64,000 bases of DNA from Bigelowiella natans CCMP2755 (GCA_000320545.1 ADNK01000870.1:135619-199618), one strand, 5' to 3'. Shown: positions 14,359 through 34,842, counted from the first letter of the stretch. Notes: generated by a model from the sequence alone, not told the origin. Numbers and translations are program-made.

Positions 14359-15302
14359 AAACACAAGCTCACTTACTTTAGCTCTGTGGCAAATTTCTGG
14401 AGAAAAGAAGTAAAGTGGAAAGGCTGTTTGATTTTCATACATGCCCTTGAAAGCTCCATTCCCTTTTTGAACAGCTCGTTCACTTCAATAAGAGCCTTTA
14501 ATCATCACGAGGAAGAATCATCGTCAGCATACCCAAAACTCGAAGAAATGGAGAAAATAGTTGGCACACTGCATGTATGATACAATCTATTATTAGAAAC
14601 CTTTCGATCTTCCTCGTTGCAAAGGCTAATCCACTCGGGTCGGTTTTCAATGATTTTTTCTGTGACGAAGTGGTGTACGTGCTGCAAACGATAAAAGATG
14701 ATATTGCTAAATGAGAGAAGTAACTAAATTCCATTAGAAGATGTATTTTGAATGGACTTTCTCTTTTCCTCTCCTTTTTTCAAAACTTTCATGTGGTCAA
14801 GTAAGCAAATGAATAATACCATCAGGGCTGCTATGTCACCACATCGTTTATTGTCATCGCCCCGAGTTTCAGTGCTCTCAAGGCATCTTTATATTGCATT
14901 GCAAAGAGGGGTGGTAATTATACATAAAGACTCGACTTTGAATCTGCAAAGTACAAGTAAGACACTAGATTCCCTATCCCCCCCCCTCTCTCTTCCTTGT
15001 CCCTTAATTGTGTTGAATCATATGAGTTGCCATGGTTTTCAGTATCGGTGGAAATAAGTAAGCCTCCAATGAGTAGCAGCCAGAACCAACAAAGCATCAT
15101 CTTGTACTACTATTACGTATCGTAATACTTATTACCCTTCCAGGAACATTGAAATGAAAACTCGTTCGCACCATACAGGACCAGGCATTGGGTCGGTATG
15201 TTTTAACTTGTCGAGGCAGAACACTGGAAGCTTATATTTCTAAGTGAGTGGGTGAGTGAGTGAGAGAGTAAGTGAGTAGTGACACATATAATTGTTTTAC
15301 AA

Positions 15303-15333
<31 letters not shown>

Positions 15334-16479
15334 GTAGTAGTAGTAGTAGTAGTAGTAGTAATAGTAGTCACATCTTCATCATTATCGTAATTATAATAAT
15401 CACTATTATCATCAACGTTCATTATCATCTTACGATCACTATCAGAACATGCTCCTCCTTCTTCATCATCATCATCTTCTTCTTCTTTTTCCTTTCCCCC
15501 TATTCTCATTACCGTCCATGGAAGCTGATCTCCTTTTGGATCTTCTGCTACCGCCTTTCTGCCATCTAGATTGAACCATCGTCCTGAGATGGGATCCATG
15601 ACGACCTACATACAATAAGATGTGTATATATAATTTATGTGTGTGCGTGTGCATACATCTATTCACAAGAGCGACGAGGTAAGTATACTTATTTTCTTCC
15701 TCAACATTCAAATTATGGCCCAGTGATATTGGAGTTAGAAAATTATATCGTACAGAAAATAGCGATGATGATGATGATGATGATATCTACCATGGACGGG
15801 AAAGCTGAAACTTTATAAAACTGCATAATGCGTTGCCTGTTGTTGCACAATAGATCACAGCAGCAGTCATCATTTAAAACCACCAGTTGGAATACTACTT
15901 CAGAGCATAGCCATATTATCACCATCATCAACATCCTCTTCTCACCTTAGTTCGTTTTCAGAAAAAGGAACAGCAAGAAAAGGCATGCGCTGAAGGTAAG
16001 AGTCAAAGTCTCTCGCCGTACGACAGCCACTGATGAATATGCATTGCACAGGTTTATTGGCTGCCTTCATCGCCTCGTAACTAGCGATCAGTTTTGGAGT
16101 AAATGCCTTGCAAGGGCCGCACCTTTGAGTCATTATTCAACGGGAGGGGGATGATAACATGAAGCCTTGAAACTATTGTCGATTATTTTTTGCGGAGCTG
16201 AAAGAAATCTAATGGTTTGCATCTGTTCGATTGATCTCAACTATCTGTTTAGGCTTTCTAGAGAGCACAATATTCGGTTTGGCTATTTGCCCCCCTGCCA
16301 GATTGCCTCTTAATATTTTTTCTGAGCCTACTACTTAATCACCAGGAAGCGGAAAAATAAAGCAGGATGGCCTCTGGCGGTGCTGCTCCTTCTTCTCCCT
16401 GCAGCAGGTCCGTGAAGGAGATGGTACGTCCAGTTCGATCTACAAGGCCCTTCGCCTCTCGAAGCGGACTATCTTCCAT
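1..16479 (-). CDS. Giant multi-exon protein (3' end outside window): N-terminal nucleoredoxin-like Trx, putative His/Cys protease-like region, second Trx (SxxC), two UBA-like domains, DUF3638-type P-loop region
   Basis: ATG at 16479 gives MEDSPLREAKGLVDRTG...LLYFSASW|CGPCKAFTPKL, with the WCGPC site split by an intron. PGGWQDTDSGHCIMH lies at ~13950. KLVVIDFFSAKSKECKEM lies at ~11320. UBA-like AMQLMAFGYEKLAVDWALRNCNNNMQAAAEKLM lies at ~10950 and VVSQGYPRHIAKQV|LEQFKYDLPIAQSWL at ~6140-6360. RQMIMGAGKSTV|VGPMLSLILADG and LILDEVDLLLHPLRSELNFPIG lie at 300-1300. GT-AG introns join consecutive minus-strand ORFs. Confidence 0.8.
13496..13543. repeat. (TA)n microsatellite, intronic
   Basis: Uninterrupted tatata run. 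It is one of very many intronic microsatellites ((TAG/CTA)n, (GAT/CAT)n, (GGA)n, (GAA)n, (CA)n, (GA)n). Confidence 0.95.
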
Positions 16480-16621
16480 GGTTGGAGATTCCGTCGAAGG
16501 ACTGGGGGTAGCGGAGATGCCGTCTCACCGGTATCGCTTTTTTGCGAAAGGAATCCCGATAAATCACGGAAATAGAGGGGAATTACTCGCAGCGACAAAC
16601 TCAAAATTGATCAGTAGCTAG

Positions 16622-17371
16622 GTGTTTGTCCGGAGCATTTTCACAATCGGTGATGCAGTCTTCTTCAATCATTCTTGAAACAATTCTTCTTCTTCTTCTT
16701 CTTCTTCTTCTTCTTCTTGCGTCTTCTTCTTCTTCTTCTTCATTGGTGCCAAGCTAGTCCACGTTGGAACAGCTTCACATTGAAGAAGTTGCGAGGTCGA
16801 TGATGAAAAAATGATCCTCGATTGTTGCGCCGAGCTAGCGAGTCGCGTTTGTCTGCACGCTTGCTCTTGCATGCGTGTGTCGTGGTGAAGGAAGTTTCAA
16901 TTGAGGAGGAAGTTTTCAGATCTGCGCCATTGGTGCACGCTGGTGAACGAATTGAACACTCACTGGGTAAAGGATCTGCGCCACTCCAGTCTGGCATGTG
17001 ACGTGGTGCACGTTGGAGTGCATCGGAGTGACCAGTGGAGCACAATTGCTAGATGAGTCAGTTTGCGATGCACGCGTGCCAGACAGGTGTGGCTTGTGCG
17101 ACAAGCGTTCAGCGCACAACCGCCAAGAGCAAAGCACACACGTCTGGACGTGGGTGTCACACTCGTGCACTTGTGGTGCGTCGTCTGGGTGCGATGTTCA
17201 GACGTCCCAGCACCAGAGCACTCGATCAGCACGTCATCATCTCGAGATCTGCGCATGCTTGCTCGGTGTCGTGCATGCATGCACGACTAGCTAGCTAGAC
17301 AGATGGTGACATGACTAGCTAGCTAGTGTGACAACACGTTTCTAGATCTAGAGACTTGCAGATGAGATCTA
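16622..17371. other. TpA-depleted intergenic tract (TA retained almost only as CTAG)
   Basis: Manual count: about 13 TA in 750 bp, 12 of them in CTAG; the single exception is GGTAAA at ~16968. Rich in TG/CA, TGCA and CACGT. Confidence 0.9.
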
Positions 17372-17652: not shown

Positions 17653-19528
17653 TCACCGTGGGCGTCCATTGTGTTGTCGCGCTGTCCTTCTATCCGAATA
17701 CTCATGGGCTTGATAAGATCTTGGCCTAAAATCCCTCCGCCGTTTGGTCCTATCATGACCTCTCAAACTAGCTGATCGCCTACGTCGTGATGGTGGTGGT
17801 CCACTTAAGGCAAATCTTCGTCGAAACTGTGGTCTTTCTCGAAATGATTCTGCAAAATGTCAAAAAAAATATTTAGTTTTAGCACAGGTCAAGCATTAGC
17901 TATTACTCATTGGAAATGAGGTTCTGTTTCGAATAAGTCCCCCCTTCCATTCCAGTTCCTCGTCGCTTGCTTCAGAGACTGGATCATTTGAAGAAACAAA
18001 AGCCATTTTGCTGCGCAAAAATGTGAATCATATGTGAATATCATTCAAGAATTACCAGGAAATAAGACATTATTACCTGTAGCTCCATCGGTACTTGTAA
18101 TCCCGGAAAAGTATCTCGAACGGCTCCAGCAACTTGATCACCGCATCCCGTCGCTCTTTCAAATATGAAACTACAAACACTCTCTTTTTGTTCCCATAGA
18201 TAGTGTTGTCTTCGTCGACATAGACATATGTAGCATACGTCTCACACATCTTTCTCCAGCATTTCATACCTAAGTACGATAAATACAACACAATCAAAGG
18301 ATTTTTGAGTGATGTAAGAAAAAATCGTTCGTACGAATTTATTTTTCTTCCTCCTTGTGAGGTGAATATGCGAGTATTTACCTCGTCCATGTATGAATGG
18401 AACAGCTGATGCAGGAATATCTGCAAAATCTACAAAGGGGTGATTCAGAAAGTCTGAACTGTTATCTGTTGTGAGCATCCAATTATCATCGAGCTCTTTT
18501 GACGTGAAAAACGATAATATCAATATCTTCATTAGGTTTCTCTGGATCAAAGTTCCTACAAAAATCCTAATTTCAGCGCTATTACAGAATCTGATAAAAT
18601 AATATTAAACCGTTTATTACGACGCTTGTACTGTGACGGCTATCTGGTACGAACAATTTACACCCGCAAGCGGCTTCCATTCTTTTCATAGCAAACGCAC
18701 CGCTCCTAAGACATCAATATTTTTTTTATCATTTATTTGGCAGCCCAAATCAAGCTTAAAGTGTACGTTAGAGCTTTAAGAGTACGTTAGAAGCTTGGAT
18801 ACAAGGGGTTTATTTATCGTGAAACGCTCTGTTTGCCAATCGCTTAACGCGTAGATCTGGGAAGAGTTCATGCCAGAAGGAGCTACCTTGCCATCGGTTC
18901 GATTCACTGCCACACACACACACACACACACAAAAGATGATGTTATTATTGACAATAGGTAAGTACCACGCCGATACAAAGGCTACGTGAGGAGTGTTGT
19001 GATTTTACATCTTTATCGTACACGAGGAGAGGACGTTGGAGAGCTGTTGTTTCTGTTTGAGTGATGGCTGCTGTGAAGCTTGAGCAAGCTTCCTTTCTTG
19101 CTGGTGGTAACTTACTCTGATACTCACGATCACAGCTAGAACCAAACAACATGCCAAGGAGATAGATACGATTTTGGGAGAATGATATCTCCCCCTAGAT
19201 CCGCCCGTGCTCATGAAATGCTCTTGCCAACTAGCCCATTAGTTTTTACTGGTTGTTCGCGATGTGAATGAGACTTTTGGGCTTCCAATCCCCTACAAGC
19301 AGGTGGTAGATATAAATCTATTACTACTAACAGCTCCACATCCTTGTTGCTGCTACTTCCACATGTACGTGCAGGAACTGCATCATCATCATTTCCCGAC
19401 GACGGCAAGCTTTGCTTGTTTTCTTGTCGCAGCAGGCGGCGCTCCGAAAAATTAATGTTTTAGAGCGGCAATAAACTCCCAACAACCATCAGCATTCATC
19501 ATCTTTCTCGGGATTATGTCCTCACCAT
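17653..19528 (-). CDS. Putative KH-like RNA-binding protein with Arg-rich C-terminal tail (multi-exon)
   Basis: Spliced reading gives ERFTINKPLVSKLLT|SGAFAMKRMEAACGCKLFVPD...AEIRIFVGT and FADIPASAVPFIHGRG, two KH-like units. The last exon reads RERPQFRRRFALSGPPPSRRRRSASLR...GRPR*, stop at 17653. The start (ATG|gtgagg at 19528) is tentative. Confidence 0.5.
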
Positions 19529-19696
19529 TGCCAAAGCTATCCACACGTCGTCAACTCGAACACCAGTGGTTCAAAATGAGAGCCTCCAATATTTCGCTTG
19601 CGACAAGGTATCATGGAAATATGTGTGCTAAATCTCATGCATTTATTCATTTTAATGCTATCATTTCTGTAACATAAAGCCTTACAATCATAAACA

Positions 19697-24951: not shown

Positions 24952-25605
24952 TGAAAAATGCAGCTGCAGCTTCTTCTCCTCCTTCTTCGTCTTCTTCTTC
25001 TTTTTCCTATAAAGGGATGATGATGTTGTCATGGCAGCCCCAATTTCAAACCAAAGGCAGACGGAGCAAAACGTACTATCTACCCCAGTGACGAATGAGA
25101 CAGAGGATGAAAGCAGATTAGGTTACCTCCCACTTTCGAGTGTATCTTCTTTGAGGCCGTTTATTTACGATCGTAGGCCTACGTTAAAGTTTTTAATATA
25201 AGAATATCCTCGAAGCAGATTTACTTCCACCGTACAATCGAGCGCGGAGGGGGTAAACTTACAATAGACATTTATTAGTGACAACCTTAAGCTCCTGGCA
25301 AGATAGGGATACTGCAAGTGTATTATTTAATGGTGGAATACACAGCGCGTTACGTTATCTACTTTCCAGCCAGCGCTCGTCGCCAATCAGAAGCGTGACC
25401 CCGGCACCACCACCATTCAGTGGAATTGGCACGATTAATCAATGAATGGATCTAAAGAAGAGTGCGATTTTATCCCTGCGACTTCGTATTTATGCCAAAA
25501 CCACCAATAAATCCGCGTGTATTCACCTTCCTGGGAGAATGATATCCGGTATTTGAAAATGTTATTGGATCATTCTCAAACAGCGTTTATTTGCTATTGA
25601 AACAC

Positions 25606-27006
25606 ATGCCATTTTTTTCCATTTTGAACCAAAATCTCATGTCTTTTGCCTCAAAAGGAAGGAGACTCTACTTTCGAGTTTTTTCGGCCTTCCGTCCTCA
25701 GTTTGTCAGCTTGCCTTTTTCCTTCCGAGGAGGGGGCAGACAGTATCAACCGTGTGATGTTGCCAAAGAACGAACAACGATCATAGAGACAGCAGCCATC
25801 ACACGAATATCTTGTAGAGCAACAATCAGCCCGAAACGAACTGATTCCAACGCTTGTGCATGGCACATTTGGCATCCCCACAAAAATTTTCCCGGAGACG
25901 ATGTTGCGTGTTGTGTGTACTATTGTTTGTCTTTCTCACTGGGTTGTCTTCGAGAAACCAGGGATCACACTTCGTTCATTTACCTCGGCATTCACAACTT
26001 ACGATGTGCGTGAGACACTACTACTTTTCGTTTCACTCCAAGAGTTAAGCGAATAATATGTGATACTACTATCCTGTTACATATGTTGTTGTCAAGGCGC
26101 ATTCAGAAAGCTGATGGTGAGGATGGGGTGAAGATTTCTATGTGCCATATTGAGGACACTGTAACAATTGCTCGAGCTCTAGCTAGGATTTATAAGGTCT
26201 GTAGCGTTAGGCTTGTGGCGGTGGCAGGCAGCAGCAGTAGCAGTGGTTGGTGGTGGTGGTGGTGGCGTGTAGTTACTTTCATTTCCAGTAATGAAAACTA
26301 CCGTCTGAAACACCATCATGTTCATAAGGAATTTCTTATAGTATGTTTTGGTAGTATTTTCAAAATGATTATATTGAGAGTAGTAATACAAAACTCAATG
26401 TTGTTCTTTTTTTATTTTTAACTACAGAAGGGAGAATCACTATTTTTATCTGGTGATTTGGGATCTGGAAAGACATGCTTTGCCAGAGCGTTCATCAGAG
26501 AATTCCTTGATAACCCCATCCTTGATGTCCCATCTCCAACGTAATCAGGATACATTTACTTGCACATTACTACTAATAAGTAACCATGAATAACTCCTTA
26601 TTTCAAATGCATCCCCTGATAATTCTGCTACTACAAGTATTATTATTATGATGATTGTGTAAGTTTGATGATGATGAGGAGGAGAAGGATGGGGATGATA
26701 ATGAAGATGGCAATAATTTCCAGTGATGCAAACAGTACTGTAGATGTGTCATAAACTATCGATCGTGTCATCATTGTCTAATTACACAGATATCTCATTG
26801 CTCTAACGTATGGTGATAAGGAAGAAGCTAGTCGAGTCCGTAGCAGGTTACCACTGTAGTAGTACAATGCTGCCCCCCATGATGAGAGCTGCTTTTAAGT
26901 AAATTGGGAATAATTATTGAATAAATGCATAAGTAGTCGAGAAGAATCAGTACCACTCTGCAAAGTTACTCATTTGGATTTATACCGACTAAAGAACGCT
27001 ACGAGG

Positions 27007-27043
<37 letters not shown>

Positions 27044-27931
27044 AGTAGTAGTAGTGGAAGTAGTAGTAGTAATTTCCAAAAAGACAAGTCCTATGAAAAA
27101 GGCATATTATATATACAGTGCAACAACCTTGACATCTAGCCTCTGGGTCATCATCACCATCATTCATATAGGATTTGCAATACCATCATCACTATAGTAT
27201 TCAGTTTCAATCAGCATGATCAATAATGCTATCAGAGTGAGAAGGCTTATAGATTTCGAGGATGTATTCAACAACCAGATAAGGTTGCTACTATTTAGTA
27301 GCATATAGCGAAGATATTGATGTTTATCATACTTTATCGCTGGAACAGCCATTAGTGATGATGAGCATGAGGAGGAGGAGGAGGAGGAGGAAGAGGAGGA
27401 GGAGGAGGAAGATGTTATCCTAACCCATCAATATCAAATAGAAACTTTCAAGGAGAGTATTTGAGAGGAGTAGGAATTTATGTATTCATCTTCTTCTTCT
27501 TCTTGAGAGCTTGCTGCCTAATTGTTTCGCGATTCAGTATTATAGAATGGCCTGAGAGACTGCTGCTCTTGGAATCTAATGGAGAAAGAAGAAGAAGAAG
27601 AAGCGGAGGAGGAGGGGGGGGGAGGAGGGGTAATAAATGAGAGCTGGCCTCCACGACTTGAGGTAACATTTCACGGCAGTGGTCCTCAGGGAATACATCG
27701 AAATATTACCATCAAATCGAGTAAGACGAGTAAATCAAAAAGGTGTGTGCGATTGATACATAAACATATAACAAATAGACGCATCATGACCAACGTAGAT
27801 TAACGAATACATTACGATCTGATGGTTTTCCCACATCATTCCTTAACTTGGCATCATCATTCATTGATATGGTGCTAAGAATGATGGCCGCTCGAATTGT
27901 TTTAAGTGTTGTGAGTGTATTGTGAGTGTGT

Positions 27932-27970
<39 letters not shown>

Positions 27971-28173
27971 TGTCATCGCCATCATTTTTTCTTCTACGTT
28001 CGTATGACAACGATAATACCTCTCTGCTCTTTCTCAATATATACTAATATATATACGTGTGTGTGTGTGTGTGTATGTGTGTAGGGAAGCGACGAACAGC
28101 ATTTTGGATCGACTACTAGCAAAACTATTGATGATGTCTTCTTCGTCTTCGTGTTCAGATGATGACCACAGTA

Positions 28174-28206
<33 letters not shown>

Positions 28207-28782
28207 CTGATGCCTAAATACTACTACTATATCATCATCATAGTACTGATACTACTACTACTACTACTACAACTACTAACACTAATACTACAGATTCAAT
28301 AGCGGCAAAAGCAGGAGAGAAATGGGGGGGAGATGATGGCCACAAGTCCTACTACTCATTGAGTCGTCGCAGTCGCTCATCATTAGTTGATGATGATGAT
28401 CATCATCATCATCATTCTTCCAATGCGACAACTACTGATCCCATTAGCAGCGTATCATACCATCCTTCAAATAATGCTACTACAGCAGCTGCTCCTAGAA
28501 GTGATGATAATGATGATGACATCAAAACGAAACTTGTTTTAGGTCATTTACCCCTCCCCCCCTCCTCCTCACTATCTACATGTTCGGCTGAATAATAAAA
28601 TAATGGGTACTACTACTACTACTACTACTGTTGGTTGCGTATAGGTATTGAAACCAGTTGCGATGACACAGCTGTCGCAATTGTAATATTATAAATTGTT
28701 CTTCTTATATAGTTGTTCTTGTTGTTGTTGTTGTTGTTGTTGTTTTTTATAATCGTATACTCACTCACATTGTGTTGTGTGT

Positions 28783-28826
<44 letters not shown>

Positions 28827-29173
28827 GATCCACCTACCACCTACCACCTAGAAAGTACCACCTACTACTACTACTACTACTACTACTACTATTACTACAA
28901 CTGCAACTCTTATGAGATGAAAGCACTGTATGTAGCTCTTGTCGATACAGCGTGTGTATACATATATCATCCACCTAGTATTGTATAATACGTACTTATT
29001 ATTACATATTTCGCCTCCTCCCCCTCCTCCTCCTCCTCCCATCGTCTACTACCCGTAAATCATATAAATCATCAAGCTACGTGGTGATGGGAAGGTCCTA
29101 GCAAATCTTCGAGAAAGTCAGCAATCAATACACGAAAACTATGGAGGTGTTGTTCCAAGATTGGCCAAGGTAC

Positions 29174-29206
<33 letters not shown>

Positions 29207-29212
29207 GTGATT

Positions 29213-29250
<38 letters not shown>

Positions 29251-30666
29251 CGTGATATCGACTATGCAGGAGGCTCACGTGAGTGCCCTATCTGGGTTAA
29301 TAAAGAAAGCATTGAAAATTGCAAAAATTGATGATGATATGGGCGATGATGTCCATCATCGTCATCATCATCATCATCAACAACAACAAAATAAGCTAGA
29401 TGCTGTAGCAGTGACCATAGGGCCTGGATTGTCTTTGTGTCTTGAGGTTGGGGTAAAGGAAGCAATGAAGGTAAAAGAAGAAGAACAAGTGATAGAATAC
29501 TTCGTAGAAGAAGAAGAAGAAAGCAGCAATAAAAGGAGCAACATCATCGTTTTCGTTATGGCATCAAATGAAAAGGAGGAGAGAGAGAGATGAGAGAGAA
29601 AGAGAGGTTTCCCAAACTACTGAGGTCATACTTTTTATTTTATTCATCGTTGCCCTCCGACAAGTCAGTCAATCGTTTTTAGTATTATTTCACCATCATC
29701 ATCATCATCATCATCATCATCATATTATAGATATATCTGATTCAATGAATGATTTCATAAAACAGCTTTCTCAAAACCTCCAAATTCCTTATTTTCCAAT
29801 TCATCATCTGGAAGCTCACACTCTTGTGTCGCGGTTACCTAAATATCCATATTCTCCTCCTCATTCTCCTCCTCCTCCTCCTCCTCCTCATCATCATCAT
29901 CATCAACAACAGCAACAACAACAACAACAACCCCATCATCATCACAACGATAATCGTGGTAACTGCTTCTTCTTCTTCCTTTCTCGGTTAGCACGTAATG
30001 TATATCATACTTGCCAATCACGACAGCGGTTGAACCCTAAGCTTCATTCGTGCACTGAAAATAAGAACAACAACAAAAGTAGCCATCATTATTGTGATAA
30101 TAATGGGGAGGAGGAGAGCAAAGATGCTGTTCTGACTGCTGCTACTACTACTGCTACTACTACTACTACATCTACAACAACAACTACAACTACCGCTGCT
30201 GGGAAGTGTACTGATACTAATGGTGATGATGATGGTCATGGCTACCAACTCTCACTACTACTACCACGCACAATGAAGAAGAAGAGGAAGAAAGAGCAAG
30301 GGCGTGGGGAGGAGAAGAATGATGATGGTGATGATAATGATGCGGCAATCGACTTTCCGTTTTTAGTTTTACTAGTGTCAGGAGGACACACCATGCTAGT
30401 CGTCTCGAAAGGCGTCGGAGAATACCAAATATTAGGTCATTTATTAGCAGCGCTAGTAGTAGTTGTAGTAGTAGTCCATTGATGCTTGCTATGCTATGCT
30501 ATGCTATCACCATCACCATCATCATCGTCATCATAATTCTATTACTTGGATATAAATTGCTGTCGGTCTGCCGATGCTGTGTACTTCATCAAGGAGTTGT
30601 CAGATACTTCTAACACTTCTCCTCCTTGTCCTATTCCTCCTCTTGCTCCTCGTCCTTATTCTCTCT

Positions 30667-30698
<32 letters not shown>

Positions 30699-31278
30699 TA
30701 GGAAGTACCCTAGATGATTCTGTAGGAGAGGCCTTTGATAAGGTTGCAAGATTGTTGGGAGTGAGCGATATCCCAGGGGGTCATCAAGTAATCATTAAAC
30801 ATACAATCGTTTTCTTCTTTTTTCCTTCTTCTTTGTCTTTGTAGTAGAAGAAGAAATAAAAGTAGTAGTAGTAGTAGTGGTAGTACCAAAATCTCCGCCA
30901 ATAAGTAAGTAAATAAGTAATTAAATAGTATGAGCCAATATTATTAATATTATTATTACATCCCCATTCTCTTCCCCACCCTTAATTCTCCTTCCTCCTC
31001 CTTCCTCCTCCTTCCCCCTCCCTCCTCCTCTTCAAGGTGGAGCTTTTAGCAAAAGGCGGACATGGTACTTCTACAAACATGATATATCATGCATGATGAT
31101 TTCAAATAAGAATCTAATACATCAAAAAATGATAAATATACCTGAACCGATTGTTATCTTGATGCAGTAGTACTGATGTATGTATGTATGTATGTATGTA
31201 TGTATGATTTAGGTAAGGAATTACCAAGGCCATTACCTATCCCACTTTCTCAGTCAAGAGACCCTTGCCTTCGCCTTG

Positions 31279-31311
<33 letters not shown>

Positions 31312-32480
31312 AGTAGTAGGAACATCTAGTGCTAGTTGTAGTTGACGACGACGATCACGAGGCTGACATGCATGAGTCCAGTTAGTTAATAACCGTACAA
31401 TTATTTATTTGATGGTGTAATGATAATGATGAAGAAGAAGAAGAAGAAGAAGATGATGATGATGATGATAGTCACGGCAATGACAATCTTTGGGATAATT
31501 CGTAATAGTAAGTTTCATGTCCGCATCATTCGGTGATGTTATGATATTATCACCATACATCGTCGTTGCTTACTCTCCAATAGGAAGCTGATTAACTAAC
31601 CTTTTTAGTGTATTGATATGTGACTAACTGTCCTCACGATTTGTTTAATACTCCTCCTCTCCTCCTCATCGTCATCGTTTCCTTCGCTTTTCTTCTTCTT
31701 CTTCTTCATTAGGGTGTGATATGTCATTCTCGGGTCTCAAAACGCACGTGAAAAGGTGGTTAGACAACTATACTCGGTAGTAGTAGTAGGAGGAGGAGGA
31801 GGAGGAGGAGGAGGAGGGGGGGGTAGAGAACAACGAAACGACTATATTATTCGGTAGACAGACTTACTACTACTCGTGATGTTGCCTTCCTGCTGACTGG
31901 GGAAAGTGTTACAAGTATTAAGTAATGGGAGGAGGGAGACCTGCTGCAGGTTTTCTCATTATTCGTTATTTGTTCTTTATTAATTCTTCAAAAGTTGTGT
32001 CCACAATTACGTCGATATGTGCGGAGATAGCAATCAAGAACACCAACAAAGAATTAAGAACGTTGCTAAGGTCATCATTCATTCACCCCGTCCTTCCTTC
32101 CTCCCTCCCTACCTAATCACACTGTATGCCTTTGTTATTATAGCGAGATGGACAAATACCACACATTTCTATGCCTTATGTATAATTTTAGGGTGATATT
32201 TGTTTATGTCTGTTGTATAGGATGATCGTATATTATTGTATACTTGTGTACTACTTGCTTTGCAAGCCCATATAGGCATCCTTATCCATTCATCAAACAT
32301 AGTAGTAGTTATAGTAGTAGTAGCACACACTGCGAATACACAAATCATCATCATTATCATTATCATTATTTCTAGGCTTTCCAGGATGCTGCAATCGAGC
32401 ATTTAACAATAAGGACAGGACGTGCTATTGAAAGGGTAATCTAGTCATTGAATCATCTACGATATAGTTGTCCTCATCGT

Positions 32481-32517
<37 letters not shown>

Positions 32518-32604
32518 CAATGTTACATTCTTCATATCACAGGCCAGAGGAGATGGAAATAACATAAGTTGCCTGGTGCTTGCAGGGTAGTTAAATCAGA
32601 GATA

Positions 32605-32642
<38 letters not shown>

Positions 32643-33484
32643 CATTGTCAGCGTAATAGTAACTGCTAAGTAGGAGTTTGGTTGACCGAACGTAAATTAT
32701 TTCTTAACTTCTGCTTATTTGTACATCATGATTATAATTATTATTATTGATGCTGTTGTTATTATTGCTATCAGAGGCGTTGCTGCAAATATGCAATTGC
32801 GAGAGGCCGTCAGAAAGCTCTGCAAAGGTAAAGAACATCTCCTTCATTATAGCGTGGGTGATTCGTGATATTAGTAATGTTATTATAATAATAATAATGA
32901 TAATAACATCTCTCATTGGGATGATGATACTACATACATACTATACATACATACAGAGAAAAAGCTTCGGTTGGCTGTTCCCCCTGTTGAATTATGCACC
33001 GACAATGGAGTTATGGTGGCATGGACGGTCAATATCAACGAAAAACAACAACATCTTAGGAGGAGGAGGAGGAGGAGGATATTACAGAGAATAATAGATC
33101 GATCAATCAGAGGATGGAGTATGATTCTCTTCTTCTTATTAGGGAATAGAGAGGATGAAACTGGGACTTGGTGACGCCCCAGTAGCAGCTACTTGCACGA
33201 ATATCACAGCTTCGGTCGAGATCCGCCCAAGGTTTCCCATTATTATTATTCTTCCTTCACGATTTTCTTTCATTTCAATTTCTGCAAAATACTGATCTCT
33301 ACGGCCACCTAATTGTTATTGTTATTATTATTGTTATTATTATTGTTTGATTTATATTTGTTGTTCCAGATGGACTCTTGGGCCCAGACATCACCTAAGC
33401 ATAACACAAGAATATCAGTTAAAGGCCCGCCGTAACAGATGCTCAACATCAAAACACAATAGAGGACAGCAGCAAGGACTATGA
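25606..33484 (+). CDS. t6A37 biosynthesis protein: TsaE (YjeE) ATPase domain followed in frame by a TsaD/Qri7/OSGEPL1 domain, with an N-terminal presequence-like leader
   Basis: TsaE motifs: [19 protein letters not shown] (26440-26500), DVPSPT|[12 protein letters not shown] (~26970), IIEWPERL (~27540). TsaD motifs: VLG|[12 protein letters not shown] (28540-28680), [75 protein letters not shown]. Both domains are secure. The single-transcript fusion is inferred from in-frame splicing. Confidence 0.75.
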
Positions 33485-34361: not shown

Positions 34362-34842
34362 TTACATCTGAAATCGATAAACAAAATCAGAATGTGATGA
34401 TGGTAAACCAAAACTGCATAAGACAAAAAAGTACATAATTACCGGATTCCGTAAAACTAAGATGACAGAATCGCCTCGGAGGAACATTTTCGATATGAAG
34501 CGATCCTTGTTAACTGGTTTTGCTTTGCTCTTTCCCTTCCCTGCTTTTGGAATCTCAGTCCATAACTCTTGTACATTTTCTAGAACCATATTGCAGTGCC
34601 TATCGAAGGCTTTTACAGATCCTAATAGCTTCTTGTTATTTCTGCAGTTGATCAAAACCTGCGTGCTGTTCATTACGCTTTGGTGCAGCACAGAGAGCGG
34701 GCCTGATTGTATATAAAATTTATAATGCTTGCAGTTTTCTACCACAAAATTTATATGTTTTGGTAGTGGCCATTTAGGATACAATCGAGGAGATACCTGT
34801 TTGGATGTCATCCTTATTAATCTCCTTTTCGTCCGATGCCAT
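34362..34842 (-). CDS. SNRPD2: Small nuclear ribonucleoprotein Sm D2, 3 exons
   Basis: [15 protein letters not shown]|[53 protein letters not shown]...[22 protein letters not shown]|M*. Confidence 0.97.

What the first reader, a model, noticed from the sequence alone, without database searches (positions are those of the whole stretch)
25606..33484. Apparent TsaE-TsaD fusion: a bacterial-type t6A ATPase joined to the organellar t6A transferase
Seen: a complete TsaE motif set is followed by a complete TsaD/Qri7 motif set on the same strand. The exon at 28085-28170 ([28 protein letters not shown]) splices in frame to 28294 through a GT-AG intron with a perfect TACTAAC branch point (28274-28280). 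It then runs into ...IKTKLVLG|IETSCDDT. The first TsaD exon has no in-frame ATG of its own. The N-terminus ([22 protein letters not shown]) is R/S/F-rich with no acidic residues. Established: bacteria need TsaB+TsaD+TsaE, whereas mitochondrial Qri7/OSGEPL1 works with Sua5 alone and cytosolic KEOPS has no TsaE. Inference: this is a probably mitochondrial single-chain TsaE-TsaD, a t6A architecture I do not recognise as described.
Basis: partly seen in the sequence, partly recalled or inferred. Interest (0 to 1): 0.8.

Follow-up and report, generated by a model that had tools for sequence, protein, structure and literature searches.

The report
Algal TsaE-TsaD fusion gene, widespread family
This alga really does make one spliced mRNA that joins a bacterial-type t6A ATPase (TsaE) to the tRNA t6A transferase (TsaD), but the same fusion already sits in public databases for many protists and green algae, so this gene is one more member of a little-studied family rather than a new architecture.

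Summary
TsaE and TsaD exons lie on the + strand. I derive 24 GT-AG exons in one frame, from ATG 25860 to the stop at 33484 (about 934 codons).

Correction 1: the observed splice 26005>26097 puts exon 1 in the frame of ATG 25860. That gives a signal-peptide-like leader, not MSFASKG.

Correction 2: the window has one G too many at 27627-27630. The only contig that crosses this spot lacks it, and homology requires the frame it restores.

The architecture is not new. 77 listed database clusters carry TsaE plus TsaD, from chromerids, dinoflagellates, Perkinsus, Amoebophrya, a haptophyte, euglenids, diplonemids and chlorophytes (the last with an added HIT domain). The t6A reviews I read still describe TsaE as bacterial only.

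This genome also has Kae1 and a stand-alone bacterial-type TsaD with a mitochondrial-looking N-terminus. No TsaB was found. The likeliest reading is a fusion enzyme targeted to the complex plastid; that location is inferred, not shown. The joined spliced protein was never built; exons were searched one by one.

The parts
25680..25859 (+). 5' untranslated part of exon 1. Contigs begin at 25680, 25689 and 25697. Holds a short upstream ORF starting at ATG 25757.
   Evidence: pieces 25680-26005, 25689-26005, 25697-26006
25860..26005 (+). Exon 1 coding part. Start codon, then a leader with a basic n-region (KFSRRR), a 15-residue hydrophobic core (residues 15-29) and about 25 basic, His-rich residues. 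It looks like a signal peptide plus a transit-peptide-like stretch.
   Evidence: joint 26005>26097; phase; hydropathy
26097..26196 (+). Exon 2, start of the TsaE domain.
26428..26540 (+). Exon 3, TsaE Walker A (GDLGSGKT) and SPT motif.
   Evidence: Pfam PF02367 E 6.7e-7
26790..26846 (+). Exon 4, TsaE.
   Evidence: joints 26540>26790 and 26846>26937
26937..27005 (+). Exon 5, TsaE HLDLYRL motif. The 3' end is inferred from phase, the GT donor and the contig length of 776.
27236..27283 (+). Exon 6, TsaE (LIDFEDVF). The start is inferred from the 48-letter side of joint 27283>27538.
27538..27742 (+). Exon 7. IEWPERL, a coding (GAA)n(GGA)n low-complexity insert, then the TsaE C-terminal segment [15 protein letters not shown]. 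The single frame needs one G fewer at 27627-27630.
   Evidence: X3 contig 27599-27743 with one letter left out at 27627
27627..27630 (+). GGGG run where the window has one G more than the transcript contig. Probably an assembly error or a strain difference. As written, the window stops the TsaE frame at 27638.
28085..28170 (+). Exon 8, first linker exon (contains MM).
   Evidence: records 4, 8, 12
28294..28542 (+). Exon 9, low-complexity linker ending in IKTKLVL. No Met.
28645..28682 (+). Exon 10, Tsa[10 protein letters not shown] motif.
   Evidence: the 36 letters between 28544 and 29077 in three runs (table 5c)
29077..29169 (+). Exon 11, TsaD ([10 protein letters not shown]).
29270..29470 (+). 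Exon 12, TsaD (VTIGPGL).
   Evidence: Pfam PF00814 27 bits; joint 29470>29766
29766..30435 (+). Exon 13, TsaD metal-binding HHLEAH and LLVSGGH. These are separated by a species-specific in-frame low-complexity insert of about 165 codons (about 29841-30340).
   Evidence: (pieces 29949-30132, 30347-30436)
30702..30787 (+). Exon 14, TsaD ([10 protein letters not shown]).
   Evidence: depth
31037..31064 (+). Exon 15, TsaD. Boundaries by homology and phase only.
31213..31278 (+). Exon 16, TsaD. The 3' end is ambiguous in steps of 3 within a GTA repeat.
31713..31755 (+). Exon 17, TsaD (SFSGLKT).
31995..32070 (+). Exon 18, TsaD. Boundaries by phase only.
32376..32435 (+). Exon 19, TsaD ([10 protein letters not shown]).
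32543..32586 (+). Exon 20, TsaD.
32775..32827 (+). Exon 21, TsaD (GGVAAN).
32957..33027 (+). Exon 22, TsaD ([10 protein letters not shown], with the metal-binding Asp).
33143..33231 (+). Exon 23, TsaD.
33370..33484 (+). Exon 24, TsaD C-terminus (RWTLGPR) and TGA stop at 33482-33484.

Best explanation
The locus is one nuclear gene of a chlorarachniophyte-type alga. It has 24 exons and about 934 codons, from ATG 25860 to the stop at 33484. Its product is a single chain: an N-terminal bipartite-looking leader, a complete TsaE P-loop ATPase, a linker of about 110 low-complexity residues, and a complete bacterial-type TsaD.

It is the orthologue of a TsaE-TsaD fusion family found in many eukaryotic lineages.

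Proposed mechanism:
- The TsaD part transfers the threonylcarbamoyl group from TC-AMP onto A37 of ANN-reading organellar tRNAs. TC-AMP would be made by one of the two Sua5/YrdC genes of this genome.
- The tethered TsaE part hydrolyses ATP to reset TsaD for repeated turnover, as TsaE does in the bacterial TsaBDE complex.
- With no TsaB detected, a TsaD-TsaD homodimer, as in Qri7, would supply the surface that TsaB gives in bacteria.
- In this alga the leader most likely sends the protein into the four-membrane plastid. The TsaE-less paralogue on contig C1116 would serve the mitochondrion and Kae1 the cytosol.

Shown: the exons, the splicing that joins the two halves, the intact motifs, family membership and the gene inventory.
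Inferred: catalytic activity, TsaB independence, homodimer formation and the cellular location.
For: Fusion mRNA: contigs in runs of three studies cover 27599/27632-27743, then 85 letters, then 28294-28544, then 36 letters (the GIETSCDDT exon), then 29077-29162. A second contig covers 25680-26005 and exons 2-7. All 24 exons have GT-AG borders and consistent phases.

Domains: Pfam TsaE and TsaD matches above their cut-offs on single exons. These motifs are present: [55 protein letters not shown] and CTDNG.

Family: P0144 (Vitrella), P0191 (Lacrimia) and P0213 (Euglena longa) have TsaE at the N-terminus and TsaD at the C-terminus. 77 listed clusters carry both domains (names). Two further members lie among eukaryote-type neighbouring genes. 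Every window exon, including the frame-shifted 27630-27740, matches the family.

Location: the leader has a hydrophobic core with mean Kyte-Doolittle 2.91 after a +4 n-region. This genome's RbcS leader scores 2.30 and C1116 TsaD has no such segment. Chlorarachniophyte plastid proteins use a signal peptide plus a transit-peptide-like leader (PMC4641359; PMC3542566).

Inventory in the genome: TsaE occurs only here. PF00814 hits fall on three loci only: the window, C1116 and C2401, which is Kae1. TIGR03725 (TsaB) finds nothing. There are two Sua5/YrdC loci.
Against: - The window as assembled has a stop at 27638 in the TsaE frame. Only one contig of one run crosses that spot.
- Contigs break at the repeat near 27600, so no single contig covers TsaE Walker A through to TsaD.
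- Contigs cannot show transcript ends, so an additional TsaD-only isoform starting at the MM codons of exon 8 is not excluded.
- Raw RNA reads were almost absent (4 reads laid from about 6% of run X21).
- Most family members in other lineages have no N-terminal extension at all, so the family's usual location is unknown.
- The closest bacterial TsaD sequences are alphaproteobacterial. That fits a mitochondrial ancestry rather than a plastid one.
- The TsaB search works exon by exon and barely detected Kae1, so absence of TsaB is weak.
- No activity, localisation or oligomer data exist.
Confidence: 0.8

Rival explanations
1. The fusion protein is mitochondrial, or goes to both mitochondrion and plastid. 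The hydrophobic N-terminal segment would then be a membrane anchor or would be ignored.
For: The TsaD domain of the family is closest to alphaproteobacterial TsaD (40-44% identity). Plastid-less lineages such as diplonemids and Ploeotia, and members set among intron-less eukaryote-type genes, also carry the fusion. One Perkinsus entry is named as mitochondrial.
Against: The real leader resembles this genome's RbcS leader. A separate TsaD with a basic, non-hydrophobic N-terminus is available for the mitochondrion. Both paralogues are about equally close to the fusion family, so ancestry does not say which goes where.
Confidence: 0.2
2. The leader delivers the protein to the periplastidal compartment, where the nucleomorph's own translation system also needs t6A, and not to the plastid stroma.
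For: In chlorarachniophytes, periplastid and plastid proteins both use a signal peptide plus a transit-peptide-like leader (PMC3542566). Acidic residues (DGEDG) follow the basic part of the leader.
Against: A bacterial-type TsaD fits bacterial-type plastid tRNAs better. The stretch between the hydrophobic core and the TsaE domain is net basic. The acidic residues align with the start of the mature domain in relatives.
Confidence: 0.1
3. There are two neighbouring genes or two products. TsaE would end at the stop at 27638 as the window reads, and a separate TsaD would be translated from an internal start such as the MM codons near 28130. The bridging contigs would be read-through.
For: The window's own frame stops at 27638. 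Contigs break near 27600, and contigs cannot show transcript ends. Exon 8 has two Met codons.
Against: The splice 27742>28085 removes the frame-2 stop at 27801 and is seen in three studies. The segment 27630-27740 is the conserved TsaE C-terminus and is in frame with the TsaD exons. Dozens of orthologues are single chains.
Confidence: 0.06
4. The gene is a recent pseudogene in the sequenced strain. The extra G would be real and would break the frame, and the in-frame contig would come from another strain.
For: One extra G in the window relative to the X3 contig.
Against: All 24 exons are otherwise open with intact motifs and splice sites. The gene is transcribed in many runs. Short G runs inside repeats are a typical place for assembly errors.
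Confidence: 0.05

Closest known systems
Eukaryotic TsaE-TsaD fusion proteins in public databases. Examples: Vitrella brassicaformis A0A0G4EZU4 (697 aa), Euglena longa EP00668_P016422 (738 aa), Lacrimia lanifica EP01063_P012682 (713 aa), Symbiodinium 'GCP1' and Prymnesium parvum AB1Y20_000482.
   Same: Same order of parts: TsaE, a family-specific segment (PPRLEV..G.GPQ..GR), a variable linker, then TsaD. Alignment is colinear over both domains, and each exon has its best matches in this family.
   Different: This gene has a hydrophobic signal-peptide-like leader, which most members lack. It has large low-complexity inserts in exons 7, 9 and 13. It has no HIT domain, unlike the chlorophyte and Chromera members.
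Bacterial TsaB-TsaD-TsaE complex (for example Thermotoga maritima, PDB 6N9A and 6S84).
   Same: The TsaE and TsaD domains are homologous, with all catalytic motifs. The fusion family's TsaD domain scores 181-215 bits against bacterial TsaD chains, and its TsaE domain matches 6N9A chain E.
   Different: Here there is one polypeptide instead of separate subunits. No TsaB was found in this genome. The gene is nuclear, has introns and carries an organelle-type leader.
Mitochondrial Qri7 / OSGEPL1 / plant GCP1.
   Same: A bacterial-type TsaD encoded in a eukaryotic nucleus for organellar tRNAs. It is presumed to work without TsaB. Database names of family members (GCP1, 'mitochondrial') reflect this similarity.
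   Different: Qri7 works alone with Sua5 and has no TsaE. Yeast Qri7 scores only 110 bits against the family's TsaD domain, versus 215 bits for Salmonella TsaD. This gene's leader is not a classical mitochondrial presequence.
Bacterial fusions of t6A genes (yeaZ::rimI::ygjD, alr::yjeE, TsaE-APH kinase).
   Same: They show that t6A subunits are prone to gene fusion. TsaE-APH fusions turned up in the same search.
   Different: These have different partners. No TsaE-TsaD fusion is described among them, and the members whose context I checked were eukaryotic.

Membership tests
TsaE (Pfam PF02367, P-loop ATPase of t6A synthesis) | Profile match above the curated cut-off | tested here: met
   Exon 3 alone scores 29.8 bits against a cut-off of 26.6. 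The own-genome scan gives 28.3 bits at the same place.
TsaE (Pfam PF02367, P-loop ATPase of t6A synthesis) | Walker A G-x-x-G-x-GKT, S-P-T, H-x-D-x-Y-R and E-W motifs in order | tested here: met
   [18 protein letters not shown] and IEWPE lie in exons 3, 5 and 7.
TsaE (Pfam PF02367, P-loop ATPase of t6A synthesis) | ATPase activity stimulated by the TsaD partner | not testable with these tools
   Needs recombinant protein.
TsaD / Kae1 / Qri7 (Pfam PF00814), bacterial-type branch | Profile match and colinear coverage of the whole domain | tested here: met
   Exon 12 scores 27.0 bits against a cut-off of 24.8. Bacterial TsaD residues 4-307 align in order over 28641-33024.
TsaD / Kae1 / Qri7 (Pfam PF00814), bacterial-type branch | Metal-binding His-x-x-x-His and C-terminal Asp, GIETSCD, SGGH and SFSGLKT motifs | tested here: met
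   [27 protein letters not shown] and SFSGLKT are present.
Eukaryotic TsaE-TsaD fusion family | Both domains on one mRNA and in one reading frame | tested here: met
   Bridging spliced contigs in three studies and consistent phases. This depends on one G fewer at 27627-27630, seen in one contig.
Eukaryotic TsaE-TsaD fusion family | Family-specific segment after IEWP (PPRLEV..G.GPQ..GR) and colinear alignment to members | tested here: met
   Exon 7b scores 26-36 bits against members. Fragment alignment to 18 members.
Bacterial-type TsaBDE system | A TsaB (YeaZ) partner encoded in the same genome | tested here: inconclusive
   TIGR03725 gives no candidate. PF00814 hits fall on three loci only, none TsaB-like. 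The scan works exon by exon and found Kae1 only at E 0.011, so a TsaB gene split into small exons could be missed.
Qri7 / OSGEPL1 minimal mitochondrial system | Stand-alone TsaD with no TsaE | tested here: not met
   This gene carries a full TsaE. The paralogue on C1116 does fit this description.
Qri7 / OSGEPL1 minimal mitochondrial system | Mitochondrial presequence and localisation | tested here: inconclusive
   The leader has a strongly hydrophobic core, unlike a classical presequence. No localisation predictor or experiment was available.
Chlorarachniophyte plastid-targeted nuclear proteins | N-terminal signal peptide followed by a transit-peptide-like stretch | tested here: inconclusive
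   The hydropathy and charge pattern resembles this genome's RbcS leader and the rule stated in PMC4641359. No SignalP or ChloroP run and no experiment.

The most novel reading that the evidence does not exclude
The TsaE-TsaD single chain could be an overlooked third kind of organellar t6A machinery. It would depend on TsaE but not on TsaB, would be inherited from the alphaproteobacterial ancestor of mitochondria, and would be kept in many protist and green-algal lineages while animals, fungi and land plants lost the TsaE part. In this chlorarachniophyte it would have been re-addressed to the complex plastid, with a TsaE-less duplicate serving the mitochondrion. If so, the textbook split between bacterial TsaBDE and a mitochondrial Qri7 that works alone is incomplete.
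Probability: 0.35. Interest if true: 0.65.

Novelty: new member of a known kind. Interest (0 to 1): 0.42.

Why it matters
For this window alone the result is an improved gene model: the true start codon, 24 exons and a probable one-base assembly error. It is one more member of a fusion family that databases already hold.

The family itself deserves attention. Reviews of t6A synthesis say TsaE has no eukaryotic homologue. Yet a TsaE fused to an organellar TsaD occurs across alveolates, euglenozoans, haptophytes, chlorophytes and now a rhizarian alga, and in this genome no TsaB was detected.

A natural single-chain TsaE-TsaD would be a convenient object for asking what the TsaE ATPase cycle does and whether a TsaD homodimer can replace TsaB. 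This alga carries both a fused and an unfused paralogue, so it offers a built-in comparison between compartments.

Tried and rejected
- A word-indexed homologue search with a 55-residue TsaD region of the 324-codon open stretch returned only bacterial TsaD of about 340 aa. Longer fusion proteins fall outside the tool's length window.
- I looked for a second genomic copy or allele of 27500-27760 to settle the G count. Only the window's own copy exists.
- An enumeration of exon 5/6 borders from an assumed contig layout gave an implausible exon containing a stop. It was replaced by the layout that reproduces the 776-letter contig exactly.
- The TsaB search by NCBIfam model found nothing, but I treat it as a weak test.
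- Seven literature searches were run, five of them looking for a eukaryotic or plastid TsaE or a TsaE-TsaD fusion. Targeted reading covered reviews and related papers. No description of a eukaryotic TsaE-TsaD fusion turned up. The library lacks most subscription journals, so this does not prove absence.
- Notes of this scan hold nothing on t6A genes.
- A cyanobacterial comparison set could not be fetched, so no proper tree was made. In its place I used summed per-exon similarity and the taxonomy of the nearest bacterial loci, which may be biased by the peptide patterns chosen.
- The joined spliced protein was deliberately not built, searched or folded. No structure prediction was run.
- Read laying was given 5,901 letters.

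Full report
WHAT IS IN THE SEQUENCE

The window is nuclear DNA of an intron-rich eukaryote with about 40% G+C and many triplet repeats. Pfam recognises TsaE on 26428-26541 (29.8 bits, above the cut-off). It recognises TsaD on three exons between 29068 and 29840. A bacterial TsaD protein aligns in order over its residues 4-307 across 28641-33024.

IS IT ONE TRANSCRIPT?

Twenty public runs of the same organism hold about 17-34% of the sampled words of 25600-29500. That is what exon-only RNA assemblies would give. I laid four runs on 25500-31400, which is 5,901 letters and within the operators' limit.

- Contigs from three different studies are spliced at GT-AG sites: 26005>26097, 26196>26428, 26540>26790, 26846>26937, 27283>27538 and 29470>29766.
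- In two of those runs the listed pieces go on to 29077-29162. The joint 28544>29077, with 36 letters spelling the GIETSCDDT exon between its sides, is reported for all three.
The single G shared by both sides of the joint explains 85 versus 86.
- This splice removes the stop at 27801 and links the last TsaE exon to the TsaD exons.
- A 776-letter contig is reproduced to the letter by exon 1 (from 25680) and exons 2-6, plus exon 7 up to about 27602.
- The two contig sets meet in the (GAA)n(GGA)n repeat near 27600. No single contig covers everything, and contigs cannot show transcript ends.
- Raw RNA reads were too few to help: 4 reads.

First, the joint 26005>26097 leaves 'AT' at the end of exon 1 and 'G' at the start of exon 2. 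This puts exon 1 in the frame whose first ATG is at 25860. It is in a frame that would hit a stop in exon 2.

The real N-terminus has a +4 n-region, then a 15-residue hydrophobic core with mean Kyte-Doolittle 2.91, then about 25 basic, His-rich residues before the TsaE domain.

Second, in the window IEWPERL is in one frame and stops at 27638. The conserved TsaE C-terminal segment ([15 protein letters not shown]) is in the next frame. The only contig that crosses this place (run X3) lacks one G of the GGGG at 27627-27630, which joins the two frames. Homology demands the same frame. I take the extra G for an assembly error or a strain difference. No second genomic copy exists to check it.

GENE MODEL

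With that one-base correction, 24 exons with canonical borders and consistent phases run from ATG 25860 to TGA 33482-33484, about 934 codons.

- Exons 1-14 have RNA support: joints or laid contig pieces for exons 1-13, and depth for exon 14.
- Exon 15 has only weak depth.
- Exons 16-24 rest on homology and phase.
- I did not build, search or fold the joined protein. Every search used single exons by reference.

IS THE ARCHITECTURE NEW? NO.

An exhaustive HMMER search with the 38-residue Walker A exon returned, among bacterial TsaE proteins, three long proteins. Pfam shows each to be TsaE at the N-terminus and TsaD at the C-terminus. They are Vitrella brassicaformis A0A0G4EZU4 (697 aa), Lacrimia lanifica (713 aa) and Euglena longa (738 aa).

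Searching with the Vitrella protein listed 77 clusters that carry both Pfam domains. Names recovered cover:

- Symbiodinium and relatives (named 'GCP1'), Polykrikos and another dinoflagellate.
- Amoebophrya, Perkinsus (named 'mitochondrial') and Chromera.
- Prymnesium.
- Euglena gracilis and Ploeotia.
- The diplonemids Namystynia, Artemidia and Hemistasia.
- The chlorophytes Tetradesmus, Volvox, Gonium, Chlamydomonas incerta and Haematococcus. These carry a HIT domain as well.

One JGI name reads 'TsaD/...TsaE'. Two further members lie among intron-less genes of clearly eukaryotic type, such as VPS13 and the mRNA capping enzyme.

All window exons have their best matches in this family and align to it colinearly. 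The gene is therefore an orthologue of a widespread, automatically annotated family.

In the literature I could search, the fusion is not discussed. The 2015 review states that TsaE and TsaB have no homologues in Eukarya. The 2021 KEOPS review lists only TsaBDE, KEOPS and Qri7. The 2022 and 2023 papers I checked mention no TsaE-TsaD fusion. Described fusions of these genes are bacterial and involve other partners.

THE ORGANISM AND ITS t6A GENES

The 91.4-Mb genome has nuclear rbcS and psbO. Its RbcS carries a hydrophobic signal-peptide-like leader. This points to a complex green plastid. Earlier notes of this scan name the genome Bigelowiella natans, which agrees.

- TsaE occurs only in this window.
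- PF00814 matches fall on three loci: this gene; C2401, which reads as Kae1 (GIEGSANK, YVSGGNTQV); and C1116.
- C1116 is a stand-alone bacterial-type TsaD with a basic, non-hydrophobic N-terminus.
- Both bacterial-type paralogues resemble the fusion family's TsaD domain more than alpha- or gammaproteobacterial TsaD.
- The nearest bacterial sequences to the family are alphaproteobacterial at 40-44% identity. The peptide patterns used for that scan may bias the result.
- Two Sua5/YrdC loci exist.
- No TsaB was found. The exon-wise scan is weak, having found Kae1 only at E 0.011.

HOW IT MOST LIKELY WORKS

All catalytic motifs of both domains are intact. From what is established for TsaBDE and Qri7, I infer three things:

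- The TsaD part transfers the threonylcarbamoyl group from TC-AMP to A37.
- The tethered TsaE resets it by ATP hydrolysis.
- A TsaD homodimer stands in for the missing TsaB.

The leader fits the signal peptide plus transit-peptide-like rule for chlorarachniophyte plastid proteins. I therefore favour the plastid, about 55%. Mitochondrial or dual targeting comes next at about 20%, and the periplastidal compartment at about 10%.

Most family members elsewhere have no N-terminal extension at all. The usual location of the family is therefore open.

VERDICT

- Observation: partly confirmed.
- Fusion: real.
- Mitochondrial reading: not supported.
- Novelty claim: not supported at the level of sequence databases, although the family is under-described in the t6A literature.

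I found no step that needed referral.

Noticed in passing
G000 contig C1116, about 15000-17300, minus strand (loci L001, L103): A second bacterial-type TsaD gene without TsaE. It has [16 protein letters not shown] and LLVSGGH. Its N-terminus is basic, Ser/Thr-rich and non-hydrophobic, like a mitochondrial presequence. It is about as close to the fusion family's TsaD as the window gene is.
   Followed up: partly
G000 contig C2401, about 18100-19600 (locus L013): Exons reading GIEGSANK, YVSGGNTQV and GNTLDRFAR. This is the cytosolic Kae1 of KEOPS. The whole-genome Pfam scan detected it only at E 0.011, which shows how weak exon-wise scans are in this genome.
   Followed up: partly
G000 contigs C546:12901-13401 and C3634:19540-19938 (loci L005, L006): Two Sua5/YrdC-family genes. 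One may supply TC-AMP inside an organelle. Their N-termini were not examined.
   Followed up: no
window 29841-30340: An in-frame low-complexity insert of about 165 codons (Pro, His, Gln, Thr and Lys runs) sits between the metal-binding HHLEAH and the SGGH motif of TsaD. Part of it (29949-30132) is present in transcript contigs. Relatives have 10-60 residues there.
   Followed up: partly
proteins P0331, P0334, P0336, P0339, P0345, P0349, P0351, P0354, P0355, P0396: Chlorophyte and Chromera members of the family carry a HIT (PF01230) domain in the same chain as TsaE and TsaD. In the five whose N-termini I read, a HIT-like sequence comes first. A HIT nucleotide hydrolase tied to an enzyme that uses an acyl-adenylate may be functionally meaningful.
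   Followed up: no
proteins P0213 and P0322 (Euglena longa, E. gracilis): Both euglenid fusion proteins have an N-terminal extension of about 130-150 residues with one hydrophobic segment (…LLWWL…) after about 55-65 hydrophilic residues. Most other members start directly at the TsaE domain.
   Followed up: no
locus L019:1279-1968 (G000 contig C86): Nuclear rbcS with a hydrophobic signal-peptide-like leader followed by a Ser/Thr/Ala-rich stretch. It served as an internal example of this alga's plastid-targeting leader.
   Followed up: partly
window 34362-34811, minus strand: A 149-codon open frame that looks like the Sm-D2 small nuclear ribonucleoprotein, next to the 3' end of the fusion gene and convergent with it.
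   Followed up: no
window 27921-28084 and 28780-28826: Long (GT)n/(TG)n microsatellites and (TAC)n/(CAT)n triplet arrays fill the introns around the linker exons. They caused repeat masking in the read-laying tool and probably the contig breaks.
   Followed up: no
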